From NCBI GenBank assembly GCA_965240325.2, contig OZ251240.1:1054001-1118000 (forward strand): DNA of 64,000 nucleotides, written 5' to 3'. This document shows, piece by piece, positions 3,455 to 47,746 of this stretch; position 1 is the stretch's first letter, and each line of letters begins with the position of its first letter. The translations under genes were made by a program, and so were the position numbers. The notes beneath the pieces are model-generated. The model was given only the letters and a program-made list of their open reading frames with translations. It was not told the DNA's origin and made no database searches. Source of the DNA: Rebecca billardiae RCC1528 (lineage: Eukaryota; Protista; Haptophyta).

Positions 3455-3583
3455 CCACGGGCGGCGCCCGCGCGACGCTGCGCGCCAGCCGCGACTCCGA
3501 CTCTCCGAGCACACGCCAGCGCGCACGGCGGCCAGAAGTGCATGCAGCTTGGTTGCACGCCGGCACGCGTGGGTCCCAGATTC

Positions 3584-23199: not shown

Positions 23200-26100
23200 A
23201 TGCCTCCTCCCGCTCGCGCTGGGCCGTCGGAGACCCGCACCTCCGGCCGTGCCGTCGTGTGCGACGAGTCGACGTGCGCGCCTCTTCCAACTTGGGGGCC
23301 GCGCGCCCCGGCACCTTCACGGTGGCTGACGGCGCTCGTGCTTCCGCTGCTGGCGGCGATGGCGATCGCTAACGTGCTGGCTCCGTCCTTCTCTACTCCC
23401 GACGCGCTCCTGCGTTGCCTGGAGCCCTCGGCGGCGTGCGCGGTGGCCTGCACCGCGCTTGCCGCCATGCTTCTCGCGGCTGCGCGCCCCTGGGGCATGC
23501 AGGCGACCCAGGCGCGCGGCCGAGCGGCGGTGCGTCCTGCGCGCCGCCCGGCGTCAGTGCATGCGCGCTCGTCGCCGGCCGTCCTGCGCGCTGCCGTGGT
23601 CATCGTCCTTGCGAGCTTCTACCAACCAGCCGCGCTGGGTCAGCCGAACCCGAGCCCGCCGCCGAGCCCACCGCCGAGCCCGCCGCCGAGCCCACCGCCG
23701 AGCCCGCCGCCGAGCCCGCCGCCGTCGCCGCCGCCAAGCCCGCCACCGCCATCGCCGCCGCCAAGCCCACCGCCGTCGCCGCCGCCGTCGCCGCCGCCGT
23801 CGCCGCCGCCGTCGCCGCCGCCATCACCGCCGCCATCGCCACCACCGAGCCCACCACCGAGCCCGCCGCCGTCGCCGCCGCCGTCGCCGCCGCCAAGCCC
23901 GCCACCGCCATCGCCGCCGCCAAGCCCACCGCCGTCGCCGCCGCCGTCGCCGCCGCCGTCGCCGCCGCCGTCGCCGCCGCCATCGCCGCCGCCATCGCCA
24001 CCGCCGAGCCCACCACCGAGCCCGCCGCCGTCGCCGCCGCCAAGCCCGCCGCCGCCATCGCCGCCGCCAAGCCCGCCGCCGTCGCCGCCGCCGTCGCCGC
24101 CGCCGTCGCCGCCGCCATCGCCGCCGCCATCGCCACCACCGAGCCCACCACCGAGCCCGCCGCCGTCGCCGCCGCCGTCGCCGCCGCCGAGCCCGCCACC
24201 GCCATCGCCACCGCCAAGCCCACCGCCGTCGCCGCCGCCATCGCCGCCGCCGAGCCCGCCGCCGTCGCCGCCGCCATCGCCGCCACCGAGCCCGCCGCCC
24301 AGCCCGCCGCCCTCGCCGCCGCCGAGCCCGCCGCCAAGCCCGCCCCCGCCTTCACCGCCACCGAGCCCGCCGCCGAGCCCGCCGCCGAGCCCGCCGCCGT
24401 CGCCACCGCCGAGCCCGCCGCCCTCGCCGCCGCCCTCGCCGCCGCCCTCGCCGCCGCCGAGCCCGCCCCCGTCGCCGCCGCCGAGCCCGCCGCCGCCGAG
24501 CCCGCCGCCGTCGCCGCCGCCGAGCCCGCCGCCGTCGCCACCGCCAAGCCCGCCACCGTCGCCTCCGCCGAGCCCGCCGCCGTCGCCACCGCCGTCGCCA
24601 CCGCCGAGCCCGCCGCCCAGCCCGCCGCCCAGCCCGCCGCCGCCCTCGCCGCCGCCGAGCCCACCGCCCTCCCCGCCGCCATCGCCTCCGCCGAGCCCAC
24701 CGCCGAGCCCACCGCCATCCCCGCCGCCATCGCCTCCGCCAAGCCCGCCGCCGTCACCGCCCCCGAGCCCGCCCCCAAGCCCGCCACCGCCTTCGCCGCC
24801 GCCGAGCCCGCCGCCAAGCCCGCCGCCAAGCCCGCCACCGTCGCCACCCCCGAGCCCGCCGCCGTCGCCGCCACCGAGCCCGCCGCCGTCGCCACCGCCA
24901 AGCCCGCCGCCCTCGCCGCCGCCGAGCCCGCCACCGCCGAGCCCGCCGCCGTCACCGCCGCCAAGCCCGCCGCCGTCGCCGCCGCCGAGCCCGCCGCCGT
25001 CGCCGCCGCCGAGCCCGCCGCCGAGCCCGCCGCCGCCCTCGCCGCCGCCCAGTCCGCCGCCGTCGCCGCCGCCGAGCCCGCCGCCGTCGCCGCCGCCCAG
25101 CCCGCCGCCGTCGCCGCCGCCCAGCCCTCCACCATCGCCGCCACCAAGCCCGCCGCCGAGCCCGCCGCCGAGCCCGCCGCCTCCGAGCCCGCCGCCGAGC
25201 CCGCCGCCGAGCCCGCCGCCGAGCCCGCCACCCTCGCCGCCGCCCTCGCCGCCGCCGAGCCCGCCGCCGAGCCCGCCACCCTCGCCGCCGCCGAGCCCGC
25301 CGCCGAGCCCGCCGCCGAGCCCGCCCCCGCCATCCCCGCCGCCCTCGCCGCCGCCGAGCCCGCCGCCGTCGCCTCCGCCCAGCCCGCCGCCGTCGCCACC
25401 TCCGAGTCCGCCGCCCTCACCGCCGCCGAGTCCTCCGCCCAGCCCTCCACCCAGCCCTCCGCCGTCGCCGCCGCCGCCGTCGCCGCCGCCGAGCCCGCCG
25501 CCGAGCCCGCCGCCGAGCCCGCCGCCCTCACCGCCGCCGAGCCCGCCGCCGAGCCCGCCGCCGTCGCCGCCGCCGTCGCCGCCGCCGAGCCCGCCGCCGA
25601 GCCCGCCGCCGAGCCCGCCGCCGCCATCCCCGCCACCCTCGCCGCCGCCCAGCCCGCCACCGTCGCCCCCGCCATCGCCGCCACCCTCGCCGCCGCCGAG
25701 CCCGCCGCCGTCGCCCCCGCCGAGTCCGCCGCCCAGCCCTCCGCCCAGCCCTCCGCCATCGCCGCCGCCGCCCTCGCCGCCGCCGAGCCCGCCGCCGAGC
25801 CCGCCGCCGAGCCCGCCGCCGAGCCCGCCGCCGAGCCCGCCGCCGAGCCCGCCGCCGAGCCCGCCGCCGTCGCCGCCGCCGAGCCCGCCGCCGAGCCCGC
25901 CGCCGAGCCCGCCGCCGTCGCCGCCGCCGAGCCCGCCGCCGAGCCCGCCGCCGAGCCCGCCGCCGCCATCCCCGCCACCCTCGCCGCCGCCCAGCCCGCC
26001 GCCGTCGCCCCCGCCATCGCCGCCACCCTCGCCGCCGCCGAGCCCGCCGCCGTCGCCCCCGCCGAGCCCGCCGCCCAGCCCTCCGCCCAGCCCGCCGCCG

Positions 26101-29100
26101 TCGCCGCCGCCTCCGAGCCCGCCGCCATCACCGCCGCCGAGCCCGCCGCCGAGCCCGCCACCCTCACCGCCGCCGAGCCCGCCGCCGAGCCCGCCGCCGA
26201 GCCCGCCGCCGAGCCCGCCCCCGAGCCCGCCGCCGAGCCCGCCGCCGAGCCCGCCGCCGTCGCCGCCGCCGAGCCCGCCGCCCAGTCCACCGCCGAGCCC
26301 GCCGCCGCCATCCCCGCCACCCTCGCCGCCGCCCAGCCCGCCACCGTCGCCCCCGCCATCCCCGCCACCCTCGCCGCCGCCGAGCCCGCCGCCGTCGCCC
26401 CCGCCGAGCCCGCCGCCCAGCCCTCCGCCCAGCCCTCCGCCGTCGCCGCCACCGCCCTCGCCGCCGCCGAGCCCGCCGCCGAGCCCGCCGCCGAGCCCGC
26501 CGCCCTCGCCGCCTCCCAGCCCTCCACCGTCTCCGCCGCCGAGCCCGCCGCCGAGCCCGCCGCCGAGCCCGCCACCGTCGCCACCGCCAAGCCCTCCGCC
26601 GAGCCCGCCGCCGAGTCCGCCGCCGTCGCCACCGCCCAGCCCGCCACCACCGAGCCCACCGCCCTCGCCGCCGCCCTCGCCGCCGCCGTCACCGCCTCCC
26701 AGCCCGCCGCCGTCGCCGCCGCCGTCGCCGCCGCCGAGCCCGCCGCCGCCATCGCCACCGCCGAGCCCACCGCCCTCGCCGCCGCCCTCGCCGCCGCCCT
26801 CGCCGCCGCCCAGCCCTCCGCCGAGCCCGCCACCGAGCCCGCCTCCCCCGAGCCCGCCGCCGAGCCCGCCGCCCAGCCCGCCACCGTCGCCGCCGCCCAG
26901 CCCTCCGCCCAGCCCGCCGCCCAGCCCGCCGCCCAGCCCGCCGCCGAGCCCACCGCCGTCCCCGCCACCGAGCCCGCCGCCGAGCCCTCCCCCGTCGCCG
27001 CCGCCGAGCCCGCCGCCGAGCCCGCCGCCGAGCCCGCCGCCCCCAAGCCCACCGCCGTCGCCGCCGCCAAGCCCACCGCCTTCGCCGCCGCCAAGCCCGC
27101 CGCCTTCGCCCCCGCCTTCGCCGCCGCCCAGCCCGCCGCCCTCACCACCGCCGAGCCCGCCGCCAAGCCCGCCGCCCTCGCCACCGCCGCCGAGCCCCCC
27201 ACCAAGCCCGCCGCCGTCACCACCGCCCAGCCCGCCACCGAGTCCACCGCCGAGCCCGCCGCCCAGCCCGCCGCCCAGCCCGCCACCCAGCCCGCCGCCA
27301 TCGCCGCCGCCCAGCCCGCCGCCATCGCCGCCGCCATCGCCGCCGCCATCGCCGCCGCCCAGCCCGCCGCCCAGCCCGCCGCCACCGAGCCCGCCGCCTT
27401 CGCCTCCGCCGAGCCCGCCGCCGAGCCCGCCGCCGAGCCCGCCGCCGAGCCCGCCGCCGAGCCCGCCGCCGAGCCCTCCGCCATCGCCGCCGCCGAGCCC
27501 GCCGCCGAGCCCGCCGCCGAGCCCGCCGCCGCCGAGCCCGCCGCCGAGCCCGCCGCCGAGCCCGCCGCCGTCGCCTCCGCCGAGCCCGCCGCCGAGCCCG
27601 CCGCCGAGCCCGCCGCCGAGCCCGCCGCCGAGCCCTCCGCCCTCGCCGCCGCCGAGCCCGCCGCCGAGCCCGCCGCCCTCGCCGCCGCCGAGCCCGCCGC
27701 CGAGCCCGCCGCCGAGCCCGCCGCCGCCGAGCCCGCCGCCATCACCGCCGCCGAGCCCGCCGCCATCGCCACCGCCGAGCCCGCCACCGTCGCCACCTCC
27801 GAGCCCGCCGCCCTCTCCCCCGCCGAGTCCGCCGCCCAGCCCTCCGCCCAGCCCTCCGCCCTCGCCGCCGCCGCCCTCGCCGCCGCCGAGCCCGCCGCCG
27901 AGCCCGCCGCCGAGCCCGCCGCCCTCACCGCCGCCGAGCCCGCCGCCGTCGCCGCCGCCGAGCCCGCCACCCAGCCCGCCGCCGAGCCCGCCGCCGTCGC
28001 CACCACCCAGCCCGCCGCCAAGCCCGCCGCCAAGCCCGCCGCCGTCGCCACCACCCAGCCCGCCACCTCCAAGCCCGCCGCCGTCGCCGCCGCCGTCGCC
28101 GCCGCCGTCGCCGCCTCCGAGCCCGCCGCCGTCGCCGCCGCCGTCGCCGCCGCCCAGCCCGCCGCCGCCGTCGCCACCGCCGAGTCCACCGCCGTCGCCG
28201 CCGCCGTCGCCGCCGCCGTCACCACCGCCGAGCCCGCCGCCGAGCCCGCCGCCGAGCCCGCCTCCACCCAGTCCGCCGCCGAGCCCGCCGCCGAGCCCGC
28301 CGCCAAGCCCTCCGCCCTCGCCGCCGCCGAGCCCGCCGCCCAGCCCGCCGCCAAGCCCTCCGCCCTCGCCGCCGCCGAGCCCGCCGCCTTCGCCGCCTCC
28401 AAGCCCGCCGCCCAGCCCGCCGCCGAGTCCGCCGCCATCGCCCCCGCCCAGCCCGCCACCACCAAGCCCACCGCCGTCGCCGCCGCCATCGCCGCCGCCG
28501 TCACCGCCTCCGAGCCCGCCGCCTTCGCCACCACCGTCGCCGCCGCCGAGCCCGCCGCCGCCGTCGCCGCCACCGTCGCCACCGCCGAGCCCGCCGCCCT
28601 CACCTCCGCCCTCGCCGCCACCGAGCCCGCCGCCGAGCCCGCCACCAAGCCCTCCACCGTCGCCGCCGCCGAGCCCGCCGCCGAGCCCGCCGCCGAGCCC
28701 TCCACCGTCGCCGCCGCCGAGCCCGCCACCCAGCCCGCCTCCCAGCCCACCGCCTCCCAGCCCGCCGCCGAGCCCGCCGCCGAGCCCGCCGCCGAGCCCG
28801 CCGCCGAGCCCGCCGCCGTCACCACCGCCGAGCCCGCCTCCCAGCCCGCCGCCGAGCCCGCCGCCGAGCCCGCCACCGTCGCCACCGCCGAGCCCGCCAC
28901 CGCCGAGCCCACCGCCATCGCCACCGCCGAGCCCACCACCCAGCCCGCCGCCCTCGCCTCCGCCGAGCCCGCCGCCCAGCCCGCCGCCTTCGCCGCCGCC
29001 GAGCCCTCCGCCCTCGCCACCACCGAGCCCACCACCGAGCCCACCACCGAGCCCGCCGCCAAGCCCGCCGCCACGCCCGCCGCCGAGCCCGCCGCCGAGC

Positions 29101-32100
29101 CCGCCGCCGAGCCCGCCGCCGAGCCCGCCGCCGAGCCCGCCGCCGAGCCCGCCGCCGAGCCCACCTCCATCACCGCCGCCAAGCCCGCCGCCAAGCCCGC
29201 CGCCGCGCCCGCCGCCGAGCCCGCCGCCGAGCCCGCCGCCGAGCCCGCCGCCGAGCCCGCCGCCGAGCCCGCCGCCGAGCCCGCCGCCGAGCCCGCCGCC
29301 GAGCCCGCCGCCGAGCCCGCCGCCGAGCCCGCCTCCATCACCGCCGCCGAGCCCGCCGCCGAGCCCGCCGCCACGCCCGCCGCCGAGCCCGCCGCCGAGC
29401 CCGCCGCCCAGCCCGCCGCCCAGCCCGCCGCCCAGCCCGCCGCCCAGCCCGCCGCCCAGCCCGCCGCCCAGCCCGCCGCCCAGCCCGCCGCCGAGCCCGC
29501 CGCCGAGCCCGCCGCCGAGCCCGCCGCCCCCCAGCCCGCCCCCCAGCCCGCCCCCCAGCCCGCCGCCGAGCCCACCGCCCTCGCCGCCGCCCTCGCCGCC
29601 TCCGAGCCCGCCGCCCTCGCCGCCGCCGAGCCCGCCGCCATCACCGCCGCCCTCGCCACCCCCGAGCCCGCCGCCGAGCCCGCCGCCCTCGCCGCCGCCG
29701 AGCCCCCCGCCCTCGCCACCACCTTCGCCACCGCCGAGCCCGCCGCCCTCGCCGCCGCCGAGCCCGCCGCCATCACCGCCGCCCTCGCCGCCGCCTAGCC
29801 CGCCGCCTAGCCCGCCACCTTCACCGCCGCCGAGTCCCCCGCCCTCGCCGCCTCCAAGCCCGCCGCCGAGCCCGCCGCCGAGCCCGCCGCCGAGCCCGCC
29901 GCCGAGCCCGCCGCCGAGCCCGCCGCCGAGCCCACCTCCGAGCCCGCCGCCAAGCCCGCCGCCTTCGCCGCCACCGAGCCCCCCGCCCTCGCCACCACCT
30001 TCGCCGCCGCCGAGCCCGCCGCCCTCGCCACCGCCGAGTCCGCCGCCATCACCGCCGCCCTCGCCGCCGCCGAGCCCGCCGCCGAGCCCGCCGCCCTCGC
30101 CGCCGCCGAGCCCGCCCCCGTCACCGCCGCCGTCGCCGCCGCCGTCGCCGCCGCCGAGCCCGCCGCCGTCACCGCCGCCATCACCGCCGCCGAGCCCGCC
30201 GCCCAGCCCGCCACCGTCGCCACCGCCGAGCCCGCCGCCGAGCCCGCCGCCCTCACCGCCGCCGAGCCCGCCCCCATCACCGCCGCCGTCGCCGCCGCCC
30301 AGCCCACCGCCGAGCCCGCCGCCGTCGCCGCCGCCGAGCCCGCCGCCGTCGCCGCCGCCGAGCCCGCCGCCCTCGCCGCCGCCGAGCCCACCGCCGTCAC
30401 CGCCGCCCTCACCGCCGCCGAGCCCGCCGCCCAGCCCGCCACCGTCGCCACCGCCGAGCCCACCGCCGAGCCCGCCGCCCTCACCCCCGCCGAGCCCGCC
30501 GCCGTCGCCGCCGCCGTCGCCGCCGCCGAGCCCGCCGCCGAGCCCGCCGCCGAGCCCGCCGCCGAGCCCGCCGCCGAGCCCGCCGCCGAGCCCGCCACCT
30601 TCGCCGCCGCCGAGCCCGCCGCCGTCACCGCCGCCATCACCGCCGCCCAGCCCGCCGCCGAGCCCGCCACCGTCGCCACCGCCGAGCCCGCCGCCGAGCC
30701 CGCCGCCCTCGCCGCCGCCGAGCCCGCCGCCATCGCCGCCGCCGAGCCCGCCGCCGAGCCCGCCGCCCTCGCCGCCGCCGAGCCCGCCGCCGAGCCCGCC
30801 GCCGAGCCCGCCGCCGAGCCCGCCACCGTCGCCACCGCCTTCGCCGCCGCCATCACCGCCGCCGAGCCCGCCGCCGAGCCCGCCACCGTCGCCACCTCCG
30901 AGCCCGCCGCCGAGCCCGCCGCCGAGCCCGCCGCCCTCGCCGCCGCCGAGCCCGCCGCCATCGCCGCCGCCGAGCCCGCCGCCGAGCCCGCCGCCCTCGC
31001 CGCCGCCGAGCCCGCCGCCGAGCCCGCCGCCGAGCCCGCCGCCGAGCCCGCCACCGTCGCCACCGCCTTCGCCGCCGCCATCACCGCCGCCGAGCCCGCC
31101 GCCGAGCCCGCCACCGTCGCCACCTCCGAGCCCGCCGCCGAGCCCGCCGCCGTCACCGCCGCCAAGCCCGCCGCCCTCGCCGCCGCCGAGCCCGCCGCCG
31201 AGCCCGCCGCCGAGCCCGCCGCCGAGCCCGCCGCCAAGCCCGCCGCCTTCGCCGCCGCCGAGCCCGCCACCGAGCCCGCCGCCTTCACCGCCACCATCGC
31301 CGCCACCGAGCCCGCCGCCGAGCCCGCCGCCGTCCCCACCGCCATCGCCTCCGCCGTCGCCGCCGCCCAGCCCACCACCGTCGCCGCCGCCCAGCCCGCC
31401 GCCCAGCCCGCCGCCGTCACCGCCACCGTCACCGCCGCCGCCATCGCCACCTCCAAGCCCTCCGCCCAGCCCGCCGCCCAGCCCGCCGCCGAGCCCGCCG
31501 CCGAGCCCGCCGCCGAGCCCGCCGCCGAGCCCGCCGCCGAGCCCGCCGCCGAGCCCGCCGCCGAGCCCGCCACCGAGCCCGCCGCCGTCGCCGCCGCCGT
31601 CGCCGCCGCCGTCGCCGCCGCCCAGCCCGCCGCCCAGCCCGCCGCCCTCCCCGCCGCCGTCGCCGCCGCCCAGCCCGCCGCCCAGCCCGCCGCCATCGCC
31701 GCCGCCATCGCCGCCGCCATCGCCGCCGCCCAGCCCGCCCCCTTCTCCACCGCCGAGCCCCCCGCCAAGCCCGCCGCCGTCGCCGCCGCCGAGCCCGCCG
31801 CCATCGCCGCCGCCCAGCCCGCCGCCCTCGCCGCCGCCGAGCCCGCCGCCCTCGCCACCGCCAAGCCCACCGCCATCGCCACCGCCGAGCCCGCCGCCGT
31901 CACCACCGCCGTCGCCGCCACCGAGCCCGCCGCCCTCGCCGCCGCCGAGCCCGCCACCGTCGCCGCCGCCCAGCCCGCCGCCCAGCCCGCCGCCCAGCCC
32001 GCCGCCCAGCCCGCCGCCCAGCCCGCCGCCCTCGCCGCCGCCCTCGCCGCCGCCGAGCCCGCCGCCCTCGCCGCCGCCCTCGCCGCCGCCGAGCCCGCCG

Positions 32101-32796
32101 CCGAGCCCGCCGCCGAGCCCGCCGCCGAGCCCGCCGCCGAGCCCGCCGCCGAGCCCGCCGCCGAGCCCGCCGCCGAGCCCGCCGCCGAGCCCGCCGCCCT
32201 CGCCGCCGCCGAAGCCGCCGCCCTCGCCGCCGCCCTCGCCGCCGCCTGCGCCGCCGCCCTCGCCGCCGCCGCCGCCCTCGCCCTCTCCGCCGCCGCCCTC
32301 GCCACTCCCGCCGCCCTCGCCACTCCCGCCGCCCGCGCCGCCGCGCGTCGAGCCATGGCCGCCGCCCTCGCCGCCGAGCTCGCCGCCCCCGCGCCCGCCG
32401 CCGCCGCCGAGCCCGCCGCCGCCCGGCACCCGCTTCGCCATGCTCTTCTTCATGAGGCCGCACGTCGGCGAGCTCGCCGCCGACTTCGACGCGGGCGAGC
32501 AGGCCGAGTTCCTCGGCGGCCTCGCCGCCGTCCTCGGCCTCTCGCCCGAGCGGCTCGAGGTGCGCCACGTCGGCGAGGGCATCGAGGTGGTCGTCTTCAT
32601 CGAGGCGCGCGAGTCGGCGGGCCCGCTCGCTGTGGACGCGGTGCTGCAGACGCTGCCGCTCGCGAACCTCAGCGCGACGACGGGCTTCGAGCAGCGCGAC
32701 ACGCCCGTGCGGCTCTGGCCCGGCTGCACCGAGACGGTCGCCAAGAACTACGACGAGACGGCCACGTTTGATGACCTGACGTGCGACTACTACTCG

Positions 32797-32869
<73 letters not shown>

Positions 32870-32889
32870 CGCCGAGCCCGCCGCCGCCG

Positions 32890-32932
<43 letters not shown>

Positions 32933-35900: not shown

Positions 35901-38900
35901 GACCGAGCCGTTCGCCTACTACCCGAGCATCGAGCTGCTCGCGCGCACGCTCACGGGCCCGGCGTTCACGACCGCCGTGGTCGGCGTGGCCGAGACCGTG
36001 CTCCTCGAGGGCGTCGGCACGGGCCCCGCCGACAGCGCGTACTGGGTGGCCGCGTCCGCGCCGTCGTGCGACGTCGGCGCGAGCGCGGCGTTTGGCGGCG
36101 CCTTCGCCGCGCCGAACGGCACCGCCACGTTCGTCGCGACGGCGCCGTCGCTCGCGCTGCGCCTGTGCTACACGTTCGCCGGCGAGCCGCCCAAGCTCTA
36201 CTCCGAGCGCAGCGCCGACGCGATCGCCCTCGAGGCGCTCACCGTGAGCGGGCCGGCGCTCACGCGCGCCGTGCTCGGCGTGAACGAGACGGTGGTCTTC
36301 AGCGGCGTCGGCGTCCGAGATGGCGATCTCGCGTACTGGGTGGGCGGCTCGGCGTCGGGCTGCGGCGCCGGGCCGTCGGCGGAGCTCGGCGGCGCGCAGC
36401 GCATCGCCAGCCGCGCGGCGACCTGGGCCTTTGGCCGCACCACGCAGGACGACGGCGGCGGGCTGCGGCTTTGTTATAAGCACGGCGCCGAGCCGGCGCT
36501 GCTCTACGCGGCGCTCAGGGCGGAGGTGTTCGACGTGGTCGCGCCCGCGTTCTCGCAGGTGGTGGCGGGCGTGGCCGAGTCGGTGGCGTTCGTCGGGTAC
36601 GGCGTGGGCGCGGGCGACCTCGCCAAGTGGGTCGAGCCCGACGCCGCCGACTGCGCCGCCTCGCCGTACGGCCCGGCGGCGAGCGTCGCGGCCGACGGCA
36701 CGGCGACCTTCTCGCTGCCGAGCGGCGGGCTCGGCCTCGCGCTCTGCTACAAGTTCGGCGCCGAGCCGTACAAGAAGTACGGCGGGCTCACGCTGGACTC
36801 GCTCCAGGCCACCTCGCCCGCGCGCACCGTCGTCGTCGTCGGCGTGCCCGAGGCCCTCGCCCTCGGCGGCCCGGGCGTCGAGGCCGGCGACGAGCTGTTC
36901 CTCGCGCCGCTCGTGAACGGCAGCGCGCCCGACTGCGCGGCCACCGCGCCGCGCGCGGCGTGGGGCGGGCTGCTCACGCTCGACGGCTCGCTGCGCGCGA
37001 GCGTCTCGATCAGCGAGGCGCACCCGCGGCTGCGCGTGTGCTACAAGCACCGCGACGAGCCGTACGCCTACTATCGCGAGCTGGTCGTGGTGGGCGCGCA
37101 GGTGCAGTCGCCCGCGCTCACGGTCGCGGTGAAGGATGCGGCCGAGCCGCTCGCGCTCGGCGGCGTGGGGCTGGGCGCGGGCGACCGCGCGTACTGGGTG
37201 GCCGCGGGCTCGTCCGACTGCGCGGCCGCGCTCGAGCCGAGCGGCGCGGACGCGAGCCTCGGCGGCGCCTTCAACTTGACCGCGCCCGGCGCGGGCGCGT
37301 TCACGCCGCTCTCGACGACGTCGGCGGCCGAGCTGTGCTTCCAGTTTGCGGGCGAGCCGTTCCGGCACTACCCGGGCGTGACGCTCGACGTGTACGAAGT
37401 GACGGGCTTCACGGGCGCGGCGCGCGCGGTGGTCGGCGCGACGCAGCCCATCGAGATCGGCGGCGTCGGCGTCGCCGAGGGCGACCGCGCGTACTGGGCG
37501 CCCGCGGGCGCCACGGCGTGCGGCACGCCTCTCGAGCAGTACGGTGGCCTGCGCGCGCTCGACGGCTCGCTCAGCGCGTCGTTCACCTTCCTCGCGGGCT
37601 CGTCGGGCGAGGGCTTCCAGCTGTGCTACTCGTTCCGCGCCGAGCCCTTCTTCCTGTACTCGCAGTACACCATCGACGTGCTCGCGATCACCGGGCCGTT
37701 CGTCGTGCTCGCGCAGCAGGCCGTGCCCGAAACGGTCACGTTCGTGGGCGCGGGCATCCGAGAGGGCGACCTGGCGTACTGGCAGGCCGTGCCGGAGACG
37801 GAGGACGCGTCGGGCGTGGTGTGCAACGAGACGCTGCGCGAGGGCGAGGTCGCGACGGTCAGCGCCGCCGGCGTCGGCGCCTTCACCTTCGAGCAGATCG
37901 TCTCCGGGCTGCAGCTCTGCTACCGGTTCGGCGGCGCTTCCGAGGGGCTGCCGTGGCGCCGCTTCTCCGCGCTCACGCTCACCGTCACGTACGCAGACGA
38001 CCCGTTCGTCACGGCGGAGTTCTTGGAGATCGTGCCGCGCGCGGCGGCGATCACGCTCGAGACGAGCGTCACCATCCGCGCCACCGGCCTCGAGGCCGCC
38101 GCGCAGGAGCAGGGCATCCTGCGCTGCGTGTTTGCGGGCGCGCAGGTACCGCTGGCGTCGCTCACTCTGGACGTGGACGGCGACGTCGACGAGATCGCGT
38201 GCGTCGCGCCCGCGCGGCAGACGGTGGGGCCGCGCTCGCTCGCGCTGATCGCGCTGGAGAACGACCCCGACGGCAACCCGCGCCGCCCCGTCATCGTCTC
38301 CAACACCTTCCTCTACTACAACAACTCGCAGGTCGTGGTCGGCGCCCTCTTCCCGCCGGGCGTGCCGCAGGGCTCGGGCTCGACCGGCGCGATCGTGATC
38401 ACCGGCGTCAACTTCGCCGACTACGGCGACCTGCGGGTGGCGTTCGCGGGGAAGGGGGTCGTGCCGGCGACGCAGCCCGACGCGGGCAAGTCCGAGCTCC
38501 TCGTCGAGCCGCCGTACATCTCGCCCACCGAGCCTGTCGGCGACATTGTCGTCGAGGTGTCGCTCAACGGCCAGGCGTTCACCACGTCGCGCGCGCTCTT
38601 CAGCCTCTACTCGGCCACCGTGCAGTCCGCCGAGCCGGCGGGGCTGCCGATCGAGCCCGTGCCGGAGATCCGCCGCGCGCGGCGGCTGCAGGACGACACG
38701 TCGACCGTCACGCTCACCGGCCTCGGCTTCCGCGAGCTCGGCCTCACCGCGTGCTTCTTTGTGCCCGCGGACGGCGGCGCGGTGCTCGAGACGGCGGGCG
38801 AGGTCGTCGACGCGACGACCGCGCACTGCGCGTCGCCCGCGGGCGCGCCCGCGGGCGAGTACGCCATCCGGATCTCGGTGAACGGCGGCGTCAACCTCGT

Positions 38901-41900
38901 GCCCAACTTCTTCGACGAGATCACCTTCGAGCTGTACGACATCACCGAGTCCAGCCTCACCGCCGTGCAGCCGGCGGGCGGGCCGGTCGCGGGCGGCACG
39001 CTGGTCACGCTCACCGGCACCAACCTGCGCCGGTACGGCGCCAACCGGCTGTGCTGCGTGATCGGCGGCATCGACGGCTGCGCGGCGCCGGCGACGCTGC
39101 TCGCGAGCACGGTCGCGGGCGTGCAGCGCGTGCGCTGCGCGCTCCCCGCCGCGCCCGCGGGCGCGGGCCGAGTGCCGTTCGAGCTCTCGCTCAACCGCGG
39201 CGGCGACTTCTCGGTAACCTCCTCGGGGCTGAGCTTCTACTACTACGAGACGCCGACGATCTCGGCGATCTCGCCGCGCGTGGGCACGGCCTTTGGCGGC
39301 ACGCCGACGCTGCTCGAGGGCAGCGGCTTCCTCGGCCTCGCCGAGCTGCCCGGCGGCGTCGAGCTCCTGCGCGTCAAGTACGGCAGCGTGGTCGCGGCCG
39401 CGCCGGCCGTCGTCAACGACACGCACATCGAGCAGCTCGCGCCGTGGGGCCCGGCGGGCGTCGCGTCCGTGACGGTCGCGCTCAACGGGCGGCAGTTCAG
39501 CGCGGGGCGCCCGTTCAACGCGAGCACGGACACGCTCTTCGAGTTCGTCGGCGAGCACCAGCCCGCCGTCGTCGACGCGCGCTTCGACGACTCGGGCACC
39601 GAGCTGATTGTGCAGTTCGACGACCAGCCGACCGACCGCGCAGGCATGACCGGCTCGGGGCTTTGCTCGCGGGTGCTCGACGCCGCGACGGTCGCGCGGA
39701 TCCGTGGCACCGCGACGGCGGCGCCGCGGTGCTACTGGGCGAGCGACACGCAGCTGCGCGCGCAGCTCAACTACCTCACCGCCCTCTCGCCCGGCGACAC
39801 GGTCACCCTGCAGCCCGACCGGATCAAGCCGCGCATCTCGACGGCCACGTGCCCGGACCCGATCTGCGCGGCGGGCTCGGCGACGATCGACTTCGACACG
39901 CCGTGCGCGAGCTGCCCGACGCCGCGCGCGCGGCTCTCGGGCGTCTCGCGCATCTCGACGTGCCCGACCGACGTGCTCACCCTCGACGCGACGCAGTCGA
40001 GCGGCGGCGGCATCAAGCCGCTCCTGTACCGCTGGTCGGTCGACCCGACGCAGACGGACTTTGCAGACGAGGTGAAGGCGGTGCTCAGCGGCCTGCCGTC
40101 GAGCACGTCGGTGCTCGAGCTCTCGACGCAGCTCCCCGCGCTCGCGAACAACTTCGTCTTCCTCCTCCGCGTCGAGAGCTTCCTCGGCACCGCCTCGACC
40201 GAGCTGCAGTGGACGGTCTCGCGCTCCGGCGGGCCGAGCCCCAAGGTTGTGATCCCGGGCGGGTTCGAGCGCACCTCGTTCGCCGCGGACACGGTGCAGC
40301 TGACGGCGCGCGCGACGCTCGCCGACTGCTACGCCGCCGTCTCGGGCAGCTCGATCTTCCGCGTCAACTTCGCGTGGTCGGTCGTGCAGGTCGAGGACGA
40401 GAGCGGCGCCGTGCTCAGCGAGAGCGTCGCGCTGCCCGCCTCCGCGTCCGCCGCGACGATGCAGCTGGAGCCGTACACGCTCACGGCCGGCCGCACGTAC
40501 GTGCTGCGCTGCACGGCCACCATGGCCGACGTCTCGACCGCGCAGTCGTTCGCGCAGGTCCGGCTGAGCGTCGCCGCGGTCGGGCTGCAGGCGGTGATCG
40601 CCGGCGGGAGGCGCACGGTCACGGACCAGCTCGTGCTCAGCGTCGACGGCTCCGCCTCCTTTGACCCCAACATCGCGCTCACGCAGCTCGACTCGGACGG
40701 CGAGCTCTTCGACCCCGACCTGCGGTACGCGTGGAGCGCCGTCGTCAAGTCGAGCGGCGCGGCGCTCGCGCTGCCGGCCTCGGCGACGAGCAGCGCGGCG
40801 GTGCTCTCGGTGCAGCCGGGCACGATCGGCGTGGGCACGTACGTGTTCACGCTCACACTCTCCAAGGATGGCTTCACCTCCGCCTCGGCCTCGGTCGAGA
40901 TCACCGTCGTGACGGGCCTGGTCCCCTCCATCCTCTTCCCCGCGCTCACGCGCACCAAGTACTCGCCGACGTGGACGCGCGACACCGAGCGCTTCGCCAT
41001 CGAGACGGCGCTCGACTCGGTCTCGGCCGCGCGCACCGACATCTCGTGGTCGTACGCGTGGCGCGCGTTCGCCGTCGGCGACGCCGACGCGCGCGTCGAC
41101 GCCGGTCTCGACCTGGCGGACACGGCGTCGACGACGACCGCGGGCGCGAGCTCGCTCGTACTTGGATTCTACTCCGGCGTGCTCACGCCCGGCGCGACGT
41201 ACGCCTTCGAGCTGACGGTGAGCGGCGGCGCGTCGGCGGCGGTCGGCGAGATCGTCGTCGTGATGAACCGCCCGCCCTTTGGCGGCGACCTCGTCGTCGA
41301 CCCGCCGACGGGCGTCGAGCTCGAGACGTCGTTCACGTTCACCGCGACGGGTTGGACGGACGACGACCTCCCCCTCACGTACACGTACGCACACCGGCTG
41401 CTCGACTCGGACGTGCTCGTGCAGCTCACGCAGACGCAGGACCAGCGCGCGCTCGACATCCTCATCCCGCGCGGCGAGCGGGCCGTCGTCCTCTCCGTGC
41501 GCGACGCGCTGAGCGCGGCGACGACGCAGGAGGCGGAGGTGAACGTGACGATGCTTGCGACCGTCTCGGCTGAGCTGATCGAGAGCTCGCTCGCGAAGAC
41601 GGACACGTCGCTGGACACGCAGAACACGGACAGCGCGTTCGCCATCGCGTCCGCGCTTGCGTCCGCCGCGTTCACGAGCGACTCGACGAGCGGGAGCCGT
41701 CGGCGCGTGCTCTCGGCCGGGCCTGCGGGCGGCGGCTTGGCGGGCGCGGCCGGCCGCCGGCTGCAGGTCTCGCCGAGCCCGCCGCCGAGCCCGCCGCCGA
41801 GCGCGCCGCCGACCCCGCCGCCGAGCCCGCCGCCGCGCCCGCCGCCGAGCCCGCCGCCGCGCGCGCCGCCCAGCCCGCCGCCGACCCCGCCGCCCAGCCC

Positions 41901-44900
41901 GCCGCCCGCGGCCGCCGCGCCGCCGAGCCCGCCGCCCAGCCCGCCGCCGAGCGTGCCGCCGAGCCCGCCGCCGAGCCCGCCGCCGCGCCCGCCGCCGAGC
42001 CCGCCGCCGCGCGCGCCGCCGAGCCCGCCGCCGAGCCCGCCGCCGAGCCCGCCGCCGCCACGCCCGCCGCCGAGCCCGCCGCCGCCGCCGGCGCCTCCGC
42101 CCAGCCCGCCGCCCCCGAGCCCGCCGCCGAGCCCGCCGCCGCCCTCTCCGCCGCCGTCGCCGCCGCCGCCGTCGCCGCCCCCGAGCCCGCCCAGCCCGCT
42201 GATCGACCCGGGGCTGGTGACGTTGGCGCGCAGCCTCCTCACGCAGATGCAGCGCGCGCTGAGCACCAACCTGCTCGCGTCGACGGTGGACCAGGCCGCG
42301 TCGACGCTCTCCTCCATCACCGACGACCCCACCTTCCTCGACGAGGACAACCAGTTCCTCGCGTTCCGGCTGCTCAACCTGCTGATGGGCGTCGACCCCG
42401 AGGCGGGGCTGTCCACGTCGACGGTCGCGGCGGTGATGACGGTCTTCGACTCGCTGCTCACGGCGGACACGGCGAGCATCGACCCGCACAACGTGACCGC
42501 GCTCAACGCCCTCGCGCAGACCGCCGCGCGCAACCTCATCTCCGCGCTCCTCGCCGGCACGCTTCCGTTCGAACCGCCGAAGGAAGTCGTCACCTCGGCG
42601 TTCAGCTCGACGGTGCTGCGCGGCACCGAGGCCTCGCTCTCCGACCTGAGCCTCTCGCAGCCGGGCTCGTCGGAGGGGTTCACCGTGCCCGTCGGCGCGC
42701 TCTCCGGCGCGTCCGACGCGGACATCGCCGACGGCGTCGACCTCACCCTCATCCGCTGGGGCCGCGTCACGCACATGGACCCGTCGAACCAGACGCTCTA
42801 CGCCGACTCGGAGGACGCGCGCGCGCTCGGCCCGTGGTCGGCGGGCTACCAGCTCTCGGCCGAGTTCCGCTCGGTGGGCTCGGGCGAGGCGCTCGCGGTG
42901 TCGGGGCTCGACAGGCGCTTCGTCTTCTCCTTCCCCGTCGCCGGCGTCGACCTGTGCGAGTACAACAGGCCGGTGCGCTGCTCGTGGTGGGACGAGGACC
43001 GGCAGGCGTGGTCGCTCAGCGGCTGCATCACGCGCCGCTCGTGGCAGTACGGCTTCGAGTCGGACACGGCGACGTGCGCCAACCGCGACCCGCCGCTGCG
43101 CTTCGGCGTGGTGACGTGCGCGTGCAACCACCTCACCGACTTCACCGCGATCGAGTGGCCCAACCGCCCGGAGGAGCTCGCCGCGTCGGGCAAGTCGTTC
43201 TCGACCAACGACGTCGACGGCGACGACGTCGAGGCGGTCGTGCTCGGCGAGGAGGCGTTCTCGAACATTCTGTACTGGGTGGTGCTCTCGTTCGGGCTTG
43301 CGAACTTCGTGACCGTCGCGATCCTCGGCGCGATCGACTACGCCGAGACCAAGCGCCGCCGCGCCGAGCTCGCCGAGAGCGACGCGGTCGCCGCCGAGCG
43401 CGCCGCCAAGACCGCCGCGGCCACCGAGGCCAAGCGCGCGGCCGACGAGGTGCGCGAGAGCCAGGCCGGGCTGCAGGGCGCGGCGGCGCGCGCGCAGAAG
43501 GCGGTGTGGACGACGCTGCTCCGCTCGCTCGAGCAGCAGCACACCGTGCTCGGCATCTGGTTCGGCGACCCGCACGAGTCGAACCGCGCCGAGCTGTGCC
43601 AGACGTTTTGGAATCTCGCGATGCTCTGCCTTCTCATTGAGTGCCTTCTCTTCGACCCGGGCAGCGGCACGGGCTCGCGCCGCGGCAGCCTCTCGGTCGG
43701 CGGCGGCGCGGACGACGCGCCCGTCTCCGCCGTGCACATCCTGCTCGCCGGGCTGATCGCCGGCGCGATCGCCGTGCCCGCGCTCGTCTTCTTCAAGCTC
43801 GTGTTCGCGTGCGCGCACGGACGGCCGGTGCCCGTGTTCAGTCGAATGCTCGCGGCGTGCGTCGGCACGGAGATGGTGGATCGCGAGCTGGCGCAGCAGG
43901 CGGCGTCGACGCAGGAGCGCGCGTCGCGCGCCGACGCGCGCGCCGAGTCGGGCATCCAGACGCGCCCGCTCCCGCCGCCGCGCGAGCCCGCCGCCGCGCC
44001 CGCGGCCAAGTCCGCGCGCGGCGGCGGCGACGTGATTGTGCCGCAGTCGACCGCGGCGGCGAGTGGCAAGGTGGTGGAGCCCGCGGCCGCCAAGGGCGGC
44101 GCGAAGGGCTCGCCGTATCAGACGACGCGCGCGGACGTGCCGGTCGCGCCCGAGGATCCGTCCGAGGGCCCGCCGTCGAGCCCGCCGCCCGGCCCGCCGC
44201 CGCCGCCGCCGCCCGGCCCGCGCCCGCCGCGCCCGCCGCCGCCCGGCCGCGAGGGCGCGGGCGGGAGCGCGGAGGAGGATGCGCGGATCGCGCGCTACTC
44301 GGACGCGGCGATCGACCACGGGCTGAAGGAGTCGGTGGTGAGCAGCCTGCGCGCGCGCTTCGTCGCGCTCGACCGCGACGGCTCGGGCTCGATGGACGTG
44401 GCCGAGGTCGGCGTCCTCTCCTCCCAGATGGGCCTTAGCCTCGCGCCCAAGCAGCTCCAGAAGGTGATGGCCTCGCTCGACTCCAGCGGCAACGGCACCG
44501 TCTCGTTCGCCGAGCTGCTGCTGTGGTACGACGGGATGGTGCAGGTGCGTGCCGCGCGCCGCGCCGTGCCTGCCGCGCGCCGCCCCGCGCGCGCGCGCCG
44601 ATCGTTCGACGCGCGAGAGAGAGGCAGGGACGCCGCGGCACGGCGCGCCGCGCGCGCGCGCTTGGCGCTCACGCGCGCGCCGCCCCCTCCGCGCGCGCGT
44701 GCAAACGCGCCCTCCGCGCGCGCGTGCAAACGCGCGCGCACAGATGGCCGTGGAGCGGCAGGCCGAGCTGCAGGCACGGGGCGGGCGCGGCGCGGGCTCG
44801 AGCTTCGCGGCGTGCGTCGTCGCGATCACGCCGCCGCGCATCGTGCGCCGCGTGCTCGCGTGGCTCGTGATGTGGGCGTGCTTCGTCACGTTTGCGCTCC

Positions 44901-45273
44901 TCTCGCTCGCGTACTCGCTGTCGTTCGGGGACACGCTCACGCGCGCGATGCTCTCGTCGTTCGCGATCGCGGAGGGGCAGGCGCTGGTGATCGAGGTGCG
45001 CTGCTGCTGCGCGCGAGGCGTGCTGCGCGCGCGCGCCGCAGCCGCGCCCCCGGCCGCTCGCTCACTCTCTGCTGCGCCCCGACCCTTTTTTTATTCTGGA
45101 TTGGAAAAAAACAACTCCTCCCACGCCCGCAGGAGCCGATGCTGATCGCCATGGCGGTCTTCCTGCCGTACATGGTCGACAGGTGCTTTGGCACGAGCGA
45201 GGCGAGCGCCGCGCAGGTCGACGCGATGCTCGCCTCAGGCATGAGCAAGCAGCTCGGCGGCACCGCCCGCTGA
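23200..45273 (+). CDS. Giant polycystin-1-like (REJ/GAIN-GPS) surface receptor, ~7,245 aa; exons 23200-44544, 44744-44995, 45133-45273 (start may be 23110 or later)
   Basis: Hydrophobic N-terminus; SP3 rod; 17 x ~100-aa repeats; IPT/TIG-like domains (P..GP..GGT.VT..G.N..V.VS.NG); REJ-like N.PP.GG...V.P..G..LET.F.F...GW.D; GPS CSWWD..WSLSGC..CACNHLTDF; PKD1-like TM block; EF-hand pair. Two GT..CAG introns (199+137 nt) restore the last TMs. Confidence 0.9.
23650..32424 (+). repeat. Coding tandem array of (Ser-Pro3)n, ~2,925 codons, with periodic SPPPP units
   Basis: 12-nt unit (AGC/TCG CCG CCG CCG) with heavy synonymous variation. Smaller SP-rich tracts at 32794-32997 and 41770-42198. Confidence 0.98.
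33001..37990 (+). repeat. 17 tandem ~95-105-aa protein repeats within the giant gene
   Basis: Each unit reads GxG..GD..(F/Y/K)W....C....GG....F....LCY.(F/H)..EP..Y. I count 17 LCY/YCF/LCF/VCY cores. Confidence 0.85.

Positions 45274-47715: not shown

Positions 47716-47746
<31 letters not shown>

What the first reader, a model, noticed from the sequence alone, without database searches (positions are those of the whole stretch)
23200..45273. ~7,200-aa 'half-polycystin-1': extensin-like rod, GPS, 5 TMs with EF-hands, no PLAT or channel half
Seen: SP3 rod, 17 repeats, IPT-like and REJ-like modules, an intact GPS HL|T site (43129-43137), then TMs matching the polycystin-1 N-terminal TM block (QQHTVLGIWF..NRAELCQTFW; AYSLSFG..MLSSF..EP). 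An EF-hand pair (DRDGSGSMDVAE, DSSGNGTVSFAE; 44371-44514) sits in a cytosolic loop, and the protein ends after ~TM5. Known: animal PKD1 has PLAT after TM1 and six further TRPP-like TMs; Chlamydomonas PKD2 anchors Pro-rich mastigonemes. Inference: a self-cleaving, Ca2+-sensing receptor carrying a very long glycosylated antenna.
Basis: partly seen in the sequence, partly recalled or inferred. Interest (0 to 1): 0.8.

Follow-up and report, generated by a model that had tools for sequence, protein, structure and literature searches.

The report
Channel-less polycystin-1-type giant surface receptor
This alga's gene encodes a ~7,200-residue surface protein whose membrane end matches the front (receptor) half of the kidney-disease protein polycystin-1, carried under a proline rod up to ~0.9 µm long; it has a calcium-binding loop but no ion-channel half and is one of ~90 such genes in the genome.

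Summary
One stop-free frame (22459-45273, +) encodes, after two small 3' introns, a ~7,150-7,250-aa protein. In order it has a leader, a 2,928-aa Ser-Pro3 rod, 17 two-cysteine repeats, TIG domains, a REJ domain (Pfam 4e-48) and a GAIN domain with an intact HL|T site. Five TM helices follow, with a canonical EF-hand pair in the TM3-TM4 loop, and the protein stops 46 aa after a conserved "EP" in TM5.

The window has no PLAT and no polycystin channel domain. Seven paralogs and 26 database relatives all end about 50 aa after "EP", so the short C-terminus is a family trait, not a truncated gene model.

- A fold model of a family member hits only polycystin-1 residues 3241-3610/3620 (TM2-TM5), at Z 11.8 and 11.3; the next best chain scores 7.0.
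- Family HMMs land on the same helices in cnidarian and fish PKD1 proteins.

New here:
- The gene is one of ≥66-100 paralogs in this genome.
- Relatives exist in Diacronema lutheri, Pavlovales sp. CCMP2436 and marine metagenomes.
- The TM2-5 module also occurs as free-standing ~360-aa proteins.

The scan had already flagged this family on other DNA of this genome (s1-341090, s1-353051). Transcription, cleavage and Ca2+ binding remain untested.

The parts
22700..23000 (.). GC-poor (0.54-0.60) stretch between this gene and a minus-strand methyltransferase-like gene; likely a divergent promoter
23359..23640 (+). N-terminal leader. The start codon is uncertain (in-frame ATGs at 23200, 23359, 23467, 23497). 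A hydrophobic signal-peptide-like segment (23581-23637) directly precedes the rod.
   Evidence: inference for signal peptide
23641..32424 (+). Ser-Pro3 rod: 2,928 residues, 99.5% S/P. PPPP interruptions are spaced 49/65/33 residues in the first ~1,750 residues. Codons are synonymously scrambled (76% DNA matches).
32425..32796 (+). ~125-aa globular insert of unknown family, with a C-terminal two-Cys 'NYD...DD..C' motif
   Evidence: no Pfam
32797..32997 (+). second, short Pro-rich linker
32998..37995 (+). 17 tandem ~95-aa repeats with two invariant Cys, a GD..W motif and an LCY..EP..Y motif. The family is unnamed and is probably a beta-sandwich.
   Evidence: no Pfam hit
37996..39552 (+). IPT/TIG domain region (best Pfam stretch 38953-39243)
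   Evidence: PF01833 5.8e-22
40363..41643 (+). REJ domain
   Evidence: PF02010 4e-48
41770..42198 (+). third Pro-rich linker
42199..43137 (+). GAIN domain (helical subdomain plus beta-sandwich) ending in the GPS motif; H-L|T codons at 43129-43137
   Evidence: (BAI3 GAIN 4dlo E 4e-9, TM 0.53-0.57)
43279..43335 (+). TM1
   Evidence: hydropathy; aligned in all paralogs
43336..43593 (+). cytosolic TM1-TM2 loop, at the position that holds PLAT in polycystin-1. It is charged and helical here. The IQ motif is degenerate in this copy but is a Pfam IQ in 5 of 12 paralogs.
43594..43794 (+). TM2-TM3 hairpin of the conserved 4-TM module (motif H..L..W......RAE..Q.FW; TM2 43594-43650, TM3 43738-43794)
43795..44343 (+). 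long, low-complexity, Pro-rich cytosolic loop
44344..44526 (+). EF-hand pair; Ca2+ loops at 44371-44406 and 44479-44514
   Evidence: PF13499 9.6e-10; calmodulin N-lobe, 6.6e-13
44545..44743 (+). intron 1 (199 nt, GTGCGT...CAG)
44744..44995 (+). penultimate exon: TM4 (44852-44908) and the first half of TM5
   Evidence: (7 paralogs, E 1e-13 to 1e-16)
44996..45132 (+). intron 2 (137 nt, GTGCGC...polyPy...CAG). It sits at the same position in 5 paralogs and is absent in 2.
45133..45273 (+). last exon: 'EP' motif, second half of TM5, 46-aa tail, TGA stop

Best explanation
What is shown. The locus is an intact gene for a giant single-chain surface receptor of the polycystin-1/REJ lineage that never had, or has lost, the PLAT domain and the TRP-like channel half.

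Its extracellular part starts with a ~2,900-residue Ser-Pro3 rod. That is about 0.9 µm if it is a polyproline-II helix, and the rod is the free N-terminus of the mature protein. The rod is followed by 17 two-cysteine repeats, TIG domains, a REJ domain and a GAIN domain with a cleavage-competent HL|T site.

Its membrane part is TM1 plus a conserved four-helix module (TM2-TM5). That module is homologous to TM2-TM5 of the polycystin-1 N-terminal transmembrane domain. A canonical EF-hand pair sits in the cytosolic TM3-TM4 loop, and the tail is short.

What is inferred. The rod is O-glycosylated and embedded in, or projecting through, the cell covering. Pull or ligand contact on the ectodomain is passed to the GAIN domain, which is autoproteolysed at HL|T. 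The freed or displaced stalk peptide then acts on the 5-TM bundle. The EF-hand pair makes the output Ca2+-dependent; in many paralogs an IQ motif in the TM1-TM2 loop may contribute.

The gene is one diversified member of a ~90-gene family that swaps ectodomains on a constant REJ-GAIN-5TM base.
For: - Domains: REJ 4e-48, TIG 5.8e-22, EF-hand pair 9.6e-10. The EF pair aligns to the calmodulin N-lobe at 6.6e-13.
- GAIN: an AF2 model built on 12 paralogs has BAI3, BAI2, CELSR1, latrophilin and GPR126 GAIN domains as top Foldseek hits (E 4e-9 to 3e-7, prob 1.0). A paralog profile hits adhesion-GPCR GPS motifs at 1.4e-6, and C..W..W..C..C.C.HLT.F is invariant.
- Gene end: exon 2 and exon 3 pieces are found in 7 paralogs. 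Intron 2 is at the identical position in 5 and absent in 2. All 7 stop 47-52 aa after 'EP', followed by a drop in GC.
- Database relatives: 26 relatives also end 19-62 aa after 'EP', mostly 49-55.
- Absent domains: no PF08016 and no PF01477 in the window. Of 39 channel and 2 PLAT hits genome-wide, none lies beside a REJ locus.
- Pfam scans of relatives: none of 61 relatives has PLAT or PKD_channel, and most have GPS.
- TM homology to PC1: an AF2 model of family member P0048 (pLDDT 77) was compared with 48,161 PDB representatives. Rank 1 is 8z6b_A polycystin-1, Z 11.8, rmsd 3.8 Å, 149 residues, 20% identity, PC1 3241-3610; the next chain scores Z 7.0.
- Second PC1 entry: 9l0m_A gives Z 11.3 over 164 residues.
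- Family HMMs: they hit TM2-3 just after PLAT in fish PKD1b (P 3.6e-4) and Nematostella PKD1-related (6.8e-3), and TM4-5 in Nematostella (1e-4). Local-shuffle decoys reach these scores 1, ~20 and 2 times in 1,000. hhalign gives E 8.5e-4.
- Family size: 103 REJ matches and 66 matches to the post-GPS block in this genome.
- Coding signal: GC3 0.94-0.99 in frame.
Against: - No RNA run was listed for this stretch, so transcription, the two introns and the start codon rest on comparison only.
- The PC1 structural match used a distant family member, not the window protein itself. Z 11-12 is within the range that helical bundles can reach by arrangement alone, according to the tool's own note.
- A family profile found no PC1 in the PDB sequence search at E<=10, and Foldseek gave only E=4.
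- This copy's GPS has a ~15-aa insertion, and GAIN domains with intact motifs are not always cleaved.
- Glycosylation, localisation, ligand and signalling output are all inferred.
- Open frames are weak evidence in DNA this GC-rich: the antisense strand is also open for 4,346 codons.
Confidence: 0.75

Rival explanations
1. It is mainly a structural anchor. In this reading it is a hydroxyproline-rich-glycoprotein-like rod that ties the cell covering or matrix to the membrane. The GAIN site serves only for shedding, and the TM module and EF-hands serve trafficking or turnover, not signalling.
For: The rod is the mature N-terminus with no tip domain. SP3 arrays are a genome-wide building block, with ~51,000 pattern hits against 61 for the reversed control. 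A protein O-mannosyltransferase gene lies 4 kb downstream, which may be coincidence.
Against: The 4-TM module has invariant polar residues inside the membrane (H, R, E-P) across distant relatives and also exists as a stand-alone protein. The EF-hand pair and, in paralogs, the IQ motif are conserved on the cytosolic side. A simple anchor would need one TM helix.
Confidence: 0.2
2. It is the receptor subunit of a split polycystin complex. It would pair non-covalently with one of the genome's separate PKD2-like channels, doing in trans what polycystin-1 does in cis.
For: The genome has at least 30 loci with PKD_channel matches in ORFs of 600-2,300 aa. The TM2-5 module equals the PC1 N-terminal TM domain.
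Against: In PC1/PC2 structures the contact with PKD2 is made by the S1-S6 half and the C-terminal coiled coil (general knowledge of those entries), and both are absent here. No channel gene is linked to any REJ locus. The 46-aa tail has no recognisable coiled coil.
Confidence: 0.15
3. The short C-terminus is a gene-model artefact: further exons downstream supply PLAT or the channel half.
For: A possible GT donor lies inside the last exon (45183). No RNA data were available.
Against: Seven paralogs, two of them intronless, and 26 database proteins end at the same place. After the stop, GC falls to 0.55-0.65 with no codon periodicity. The next + strand ORF (45900-48707) is a coiled-coil-like protein with no Pfam family. 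No PF08016 or PF01477 match lies anywhere in the window.
Confidence: 0.03
4. It is a decaying or silent paralog of a large family, not a working gene.
For: The IQ motif is degenerate and the GPS carries an insertion compared with most paralogs. The family is very large, so some members may be redundant.
Against: There is no stop or frameshift in ~21.5 kb of coding sequence outside the two conserved introns. GC3 is 0.94-0.99 throughout. The EF loops, HL|T, the four GPS cysteines and the nearly invariant TM residues are all kept.
Confidence: 0.07

Closest known systems
Polycystin-1 / PKD1 family (PKD1, PKD1L1-3, PKDREJ; here fish PKD1b P0172 and Nematostella PKD1-related P0173)
   Same: REJ domain, GAIN/GPS with HL|T just before TM1, then a cytosolic loop, a TM2-TM3 hairpin, a long cytosolic loop and a TM4-TM5 hairpin. 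The TM2-5 fold and motifs match: H..L...(F/Y)(T/S)RAQ...(W/F)Y spans 39 residues in both, and both have an 'EP'/'QP' in TM5.
   Different: There is no PLAT in the TM1-TM2 loop, no TOP domain or S1-S6 channel half, no C-terminal coiled coil and no PKD Ig repeats. An EF-hand pair sits in the TM3-TM4 loop. The ectodomain is a Ser-Pro3 rod plus an unnamed repeat.
Sea-urchin sperm receptors for egg jelly (suREJ1/2) and Ectocarpus Esi0130_0068
   Same: These are REJ + GPS membrane proteins that lack all or part of the PKD1 channel half. The Ectocarpus protein is a 1,427-aa REJ-GPS protein with 6-7 predicted TMs, specific to male gametes (PMC4700764).
   Different: They are about five times smaller, with lectin or no added ectodomains, no proline rod and no reported EF-hand pair. 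The low TM number of suREJ1/2 is recalled from the literature cited in that paper and was not tested here.
Adhesion GPCRs
   Same: GAIN domain fold and GPS motif directly before TM1. A very large modular ectodomain suggests force- or adhesion-triggered exposure of a tethered peptide.
   Different: The membrane part is 5 TM of the polycystin-1 type, not a secretin-like 7TM. No 7tm Pfam hit was found.
Unannotated relatives: Diacronema lutheri KAG8462819.1 (P0005), Pavlovales sp. CCMP2436 T492DRAFT_959500 (P0161), metagenome proteins P0004, P0006, P0008
   Same: They share the architecture TIG-REJ-GPS-TM block-EF-hand pair-TM4/5-short tail.
   Different: They are 1,500-3,500 aa as predicted, filed as hypothetical or EF-hand-domain proteins. 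None of those scanned has a rod of this length. Some more distant members lack the EF pair or place it in the TM1-TM2 loop (P0097).
Extensins and volvocine hydroxyproline-rich glycoproteins
   Same: Long Ser-Pro3/4 arrays expected to form rigid, O-glycosylated polyproline-II rods (established knowledge of these families).
   Different: Here the rod is fused to a multi-pass receptor and is about 2,900 residues long. Hydroxylation and glycosylation were not tested.

Membership tests
Polycystin-1 (PKD1) family | REJ domain | tested here: met
   PF02010 4e-48, positions 14-448 of 452
Polycystin-1 (PKD1) family | GAIN domain with a GPS HL|T site immediately before TM1 | tested here: met
   The fold matches GAIN crystal structures (E 4e-9). 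The profile hits GPS motifs at 1.4e-6. HLT is at 43129-43137. Actual cleavage was not tested.
Polycystin-1 (PKD1) family | PLAT/LH2 domain in the TM1-TM2 cytosolic loop | tested here: not met
   No PF01477 in the protein or in the window in six frames. The loop is ~86 aa and charged or helical.
Polycystin-1 (PKD1) family | N-terminal TM domain (TM2-TM5 four-helix module) | tested here: met
   VIA-align gives Z 11.8 and 11.3 to PC1 3241-3610/3620, against a next best of 7.0. HMM and hhalign hits fall on the same helices of P0172 and P0173. The structural test used family member P0048, not the window protein.
Polycystin-1 (PKD1) family | TOP domain plus S1-S6 TRP-like channel half (PF08016) | tested here: not met
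   No PF08016 match in the window. The protein ends 46 aa after 'EP', as do all relatives.
Polycystin-1 (PKD1) family | C-terminal coiled coil that binds PKD2 | tested here: inconclusive
   The tail is only 46 aa and had no Pfam hit. No dedicated coiled-coil prediction was run.
Adhesion GPCR | Secretin-like 7TM domain after the GAIN domain | tested here: not met
   Five TM segments and no 7tm Pfam family. The TM fold matches PC1 far better than ADGRF1 (Z 11.8 against 7.0).
EF-hand Ca2+ sensors | Paired 12-residue loops with ligands at positions 1, 3, 5 and 12 and Gly at 6 | tested here: met
   Both loops (DRDGSGSMDVAE and DSSGNGTVSFAE) fit. PF13499 scores 9.6e-10 and the calmodulin N-lobe 6.6e-13. 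Binding was not measured.
Extensin-like / HRGP rods | Pro hydroxylation and O-arabinosylation or O-galactosylation of Ser-Pro(n) arrays | not testable with these tools
   Only the sequence motif is shown: 2,928 residues, 99.5% S/P.

The most novel reading that the evidence does not exclude
The REJ-GAIN-5TM receptor seen here is the free-living form of the front half of polycystin-1. In this reading animal PKD1 arose by fusing such a receptor, plus PLAT, to a PKD2-like channel. The TM2-TM5 four-helix module would be an autonomous unit, possibly Ca2+-regulated or ion-handling, that also works alone as ~360-aa proteins in many protists. If so, this alga's ~90 paralogs are a natural library for finding out what the still-unexplained N-terminal TM domain of polycystin-1 does.
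Probability: 0.35. Interest if true: 0.8.

Novelty: new variant of a known kind. Interest (0 to 1): 0.62.

Why it matters
The role of the N-terminal transmembrane domain of polycystin-1, the main polycystic-kidney-disease protein, is poorly understood. This locus bears on that question in three ways.

- **Separable module.** The domain exists without PLAT and without the channel half. It occurs coupled to REJ-GAIN in a giant algal receptor and also as a stand-alone 4-TM protein. That makes it a separable module which can be expressed and assayed alone.
- **Evolutionary test.** It gives a concrete, testable scenario for polycystin-1: fusion of a receptor with a channel, or loss of the channel half in this lineage.
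- **Algal biology.** About 90 giant genes place different ectodomains on micrometre-scale proline rods over one conserved signalling base. This points to a large, unexplored surface-sensing or adhesion repertoire in pavlovophyte-type haptophytes.

Tried and rejected
- **RNA evidence.** No run was listed for 42200-46400.
- **Word-index protein searches.**
  - With the C-terminal region as part of the whole protein, the search gave only an EF-hand hit.
  - With profile A1 it gave a single metagenome fragment.
  - The exhaustive HMM search was therefore needed.
- **PDB sequence searches.** The protein and profiles A1 and A2 found calmodulin, GPS and IQ-type hits but no polycystin-1 at E<=10.
- **Structure searches with the 4-TM model.** Foldseek was not significant (PC1/PC2 entry 9l0m at E=4, rank 4). 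The ESM-Atlas shape search gave nothing above TM 0.23.
- **A possible in-genome comparator.** The 6,448-codon ORF with a PKD_channel match on C16 was fetched. It is an ankyrin-bearing TRP/PKD2-like channel without GPS, so it was dropped.
- **The 17 repeats.** They have no Pfam or PDB relative. The language-model search found only unnamed eukaryotic clusters.
- **Tool failures.** One own-genome search failed on the server and was repeated with a shorter piece. One pattern was too long and was shortened.
- **Spliced model.** The exons were searched one by one by reference and were never joined.
- **Rejected readings.** These were a bacterial origin, an assembly artefact for the rod, and upstream exons supplying a tip domain.
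  - The window has eukaryotic GT-AG introns and GC3-biased codons.
  - The rod's DNA copies match at only 76%, with mixed Ser codon families.
  - The upstream 1.2 kb is a minus-strand methyltransferase-like gene.
Full report
**What is in the sequence.**

The window is about 70% GC. It lies on contig C23 of a 72-Mb, 41-contig genome that earlier notes call haptophyte-type. A single frame is open from 22459 to 45273. Openness alone means little here, because the antisense strand is also open for 4,346 codons. The in-frame third codon position, however, is 94-99% G+C in every proposed coding part. It is flat upstream of about 23300, in both proposed introns and after the stop.

The parts, in order:
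- A short leader whose last hydrophobic segment looks like a signal peptide.
- A 2,928-residue Ser-Pro3 array that is 99.5% S/P.
  - It has a 12-nt DNA period with 705 copies.
  - Only 76% of bases match and serine codon families are mixed, so it is not a simple assembly artefact.
- A ~125-aa unnamed insert and a short proline linker.
- 17 repeats of 91-103 aa with two invariant cysteines.
- TIG domains (5.8e-22).
- A REJ domain (4e-48).
- A third proline linker.
- A ~310-aa region ending in C.C.HLTDF.
- Transmembrane segments and an EF-hand pair (9.6e-10).

**Gene boundaries.**

*Upstream.* The codon-phase signal at 21500-22700 belongs to a minus-strand gene, a lysine-methyltransferase-like protein (PF10294, 5e-17). 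GC drops to 0.54-0.60 at 22700-23000. The gene therefore starts after about 23000. Whichever is used, the rod is the N-terminus of the mature protein. This copy has no tip domain, unlike two paralogs described in earlier scan notes.

*3' end.*
- The main frame leaves the conserved sequence just after the second EF loop, at a GTGCGT.
- A second frame carries TM4 and half of TM5 (44744-44995).
- The first frame resumes at CAG|GAGCCG (45133) and stops at 45271-45273.

I searched the exons one by one and did not join them. Both pieces are present in seven paralogs (E 1e-13 to 1e-16 and 1e-5 to 6e-4). Intron 2 sits at exactly the same codon boundary in five paralogs, each with GTG...CAG ends. It is absent in two, where the sequence runs straight through. 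All seven paralogs stop 47-52 residues after 'EP' (the window gene 46) with TGA, followed by AT-richer DNA.

No RNA run was listed, so this is comparative evidence, not transcript evidence.

**No PLAT and no channel half.**

Six-frame searches of the whole genome gave these counts:
- 103 REJ matches, nearly all inside open frames of 2,000-21,000 codons.
- 39 PKD_channel matches, none in the window and none beside a REJ locus.
- Two PLAT matches, both elsewhere.

The post-GPS block of this gene matches 66 places in the genome. An exhaustive HMM search with a 46-sequence profile of the TM2-TM3 hairpin found 245 representatives at E<=1e-3 among 1.84 billion proteins.

The large hits have the same order of parts: TIG-REJ-GPS-TM block-EF pair. 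One of them is Diacronema lutheri KAG8462819.1, filed as hypothetical. A REJ-based search added Pavlovales sp. CCMP2436 and Aureococcus proteins. Of 61 relatives scanned with Pfam, none has PLAT or PKD_channel. Twenty-six relatives in which TM5 could be found end 19-62, mostly 49-55, residues after 'EP'. The short C-terminus is therefore a family character.

**GAIN and GPS.**

A profile of 12 paralogs matches the GPS motifs of adhesion GPCRs in the PDB (1.4e-6), and the four cysteines, two tryptophans and HLT.F are invariant.

An AlphaFold2 model of the window's own 383 residues, built with paralogs as the alignment, has mean pLDDT 64.5. It shows five long helices followed by a beta-sandwich. 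Its top Foldseek hits are GAIN domains: BAI3, BAI2, CELSR1, latrophilin-1, GPR126 and GPR110. Their E-values run from 4e-9 to 3e-7 at probability 1.0, with TM up to 0.57.

This copy has a ~15-aa insertion in the GPS, which explains its weak Pfam score.

**Is the TM block polycystin-1-like?**

Sequence-to-profile searches of the PDB did not find polycystin-1. Three other lines of evidence do support it.

1. *Motif and HMM matches.* In Nematostella PKD1-related protein and a fish PKD1b, both retrieved through the REJ search, the helix after PLAT carries H.WLS...(S)(R/S)FTR.QR...WY. The family has H.LL......(Y/L)(S/T)RAQ...(F/W)Y. The H-to-Y distance is 39 residues in both the Nematostella protein and family member P0048.
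   - Family HMMs place their best hit exactly on that hairpin in both animal proteins (per-sequence P 3.6e-4 and 6.8e-3).
   - They also hit the next hairpin in Nematostella (P 1e-4).
   - Decoys that keep local hydrophobicity reach these scores 1, about 20 and 2 times in 1,000.
   - hhalign gives E 8.5e-4 for TM4-5.
2. *Structure.* Distant family members are stand-alone ~360-aa proteins that begin just before TM2. One of them, P0048, folded with a 27-sequence alignment, gave a confident model (pLDDT 77, about 90 in the helices).
   - Aligned against 48,161 PDB representatives without any Foldseek prefilter, its only match at Z>=8 is polycystin-1 in the PC1/PC2 complex 8z6b.
   - That match has Z 11.8, rmsd 3.8 Å, 149 residues and 20% identity, with model 21-321 on PC1 3241-3610. 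The next chain scores 7.0.
   - A second PC1 entry, 9l0m, gives Z 11.3 over 164 residues, to PC1 3241-3620. From my knowledge of the human protein, that range covers TM2-TM5, between PLAT and the channel half.
3. *Topology.* Both proteins share the same layout: a GPS-proximal TM1, a cytosolic loop, a tight hairpin, a long cytosolic loop and a second tight hairpin.

The tool warns that helical bundles can reach Z of about 13 by arrangement alone. The gap to rank 2, the identity, the predicted location and the independent sequence signal together make homology the best reading. The weakness is that the fold test used a relative, not the window protein. The window's hairpins belong to the same alignments.

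**Cytosolic features.**

With the N-terminus outside, the TM1-TM2 and TM3-TM4 loops are cytosolic. The basic cluster after TM1 agrees with this.

The EF pair aligns to the calmodulin N-lobe over 67 residues, and both loops keep the ligand positions.

In 5 of 12 paralogs the TM1-TM2 loop, where polycystin-1 has PLAT, carries a Pfam IQ motif. This copy and its nearest paralog have a shortened, degenerate version. An EF pair and an IQ motif on the same face suggest an intramolecular or calmodulin-mediated Ca2+ switch. That is inference.

**How it most likely works.**

*Shown:* the architecture above.

*Inferred:*
- The rod is about 0.9 µm long, taking the ~0.31 nm per residue rise of a polyproline-II helix (established value). 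It projects into or through the cell covering and is O-glycosylated as Ser-Pro arrays are in plants and green algae.
- Force or contact on the ectodomain acts on the GAIN domain, which is cleaved at HL|T.
- The stalk peptide then engages the 5-TM bundle.
- Ca2+ bound by the EF pair sets or reports the state of the two hairpins it links.

I put about 0.9 on the identity of the parts and about 0.45 on this mechanism.

The rivals are a purely structural anchor, a trans-acting partner of the genome's separate PKD2-like channels, a silent paralog, and a truncated gene model. They are listed with their tests; the last is close to excluded.

**Comparison and novelty.**

The protein meets three defining features of the PKD1 family: REJ, GAIN/GPS and the N-terminal TM module. 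It fails two: PLAT and the channel half. I therefore do not file it as a polycystin-1. It is a channel-less relative.

REJ-GPS proteins without a full channel half are known from sea-urchin sperm and from Ectocarpus male gametes (PMC4700764). GAIN domains are known in protists (PMC3321182).

I found no paper describing this algal family, the EF-hand insertion or the stand-alone 4-TM proteins. The searchable library is limited, so this is not proof of absence.

Relatives are in public databases as hypothetical proteins. This scan had already flagged two paralogs on other DNA of the same genome (s1-341090, s1-353051). SP3 arrays are common in this genome: about 51,000 pattern hits against 61 for the reversed control.

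What is added here is a tested link of TM2-5 to the polycystin-1 N-terminal TM domain. Also added are the family-wide C-terminus and the existence of the module on its own.

**Verdict.**

It is a new variant of a known kind, of moderate to high interest. Its main value is that it makes the polycystin-1 N-terminal TM domain experimentally separable.

Noticed in passing
window 49239-51455 (-): An intact protein O-mannosyltransferase gene (PMT 2.3e-41 plus PMT_4TMC 6.5e-31) lies 4 kb downstream of a gene encoding ~700 Ser-Pro3 units. A functional link is not shown and this may be coincidence.
   Followed up: partly
window 21653-22882 (-): A divergently oriented lysine-methyltransferase-like gene (PF10294, 5e-17) is present. 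Its codon phase shows that the + strand ORF upstream of ~23000 is not coding.
   Followed up: partly
window 22459-45273 (+): The two introns plus the exon between them total 588 nt (196 codons) and contain no stop in the main frame. An unspliced mRNA would therefore still be translated to the same stop, but without TM4.
   Followed up: no
window 31900-44940 (-): A 4,346-codon antisense open frame lies opposite the gene. This is the expected by-product of ~97% GC3 coding DNA and is not evidence of a gene.
   Followed up: partly
P0048, P0116, P0107, P0076, P0046 (database proteins): These are stand-alone ~360-545-aa proteins made only of the TM2-TM5 module, with a conserved 'SYASL' box before TM4 and the same ~52-aa tail. 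They have no GPS, no TM1 and no Pfam family.
   Followed up: partly
P0097 (metagenome protein, 1,827 aa): This relative has the EF-hand pair (1333-1391) between the GPS (994-1034) and the TM2-3 hairpin (1624-1728). That places it in the TM1-TM2 loop instead of the TM3-TM4 loop.
   Followed up: no
L056 = G000:C16:878500-888499 (-): A 6,448-codon open frame ends in ankyrin-like repeats and a PKD2/TRP-like six-TM channel (PKD_channel 2.5e-8). It is a giant channel protein unrelated to the REJ family.
   Followed up: partly
G000 whole genome: The pattern for about 2.7 consecutive (Ser/Thr)-Pro3 units occurs ~51,000 times, against 61 for the reversed control. Proline rods are a general building block of this genome's proteins.
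   Followed up: partly
window 32425-32796 (+): A ~125-aa insert between the rod and the second linker has an alpha/beta-looking first half and a C-terminal C..T..A.NYD..A..DD..C motif. It has no Pfam match.
   Followed up: no
window 45900-48707 (+): A 935-aa Ala/Glu/Arg-rich, coiled-coil-like ORF with a poly-Gln run lies immediately downstream. It has no Pfam family and is a separate gene, not a continuation of the receptor.
   Followed up: partly
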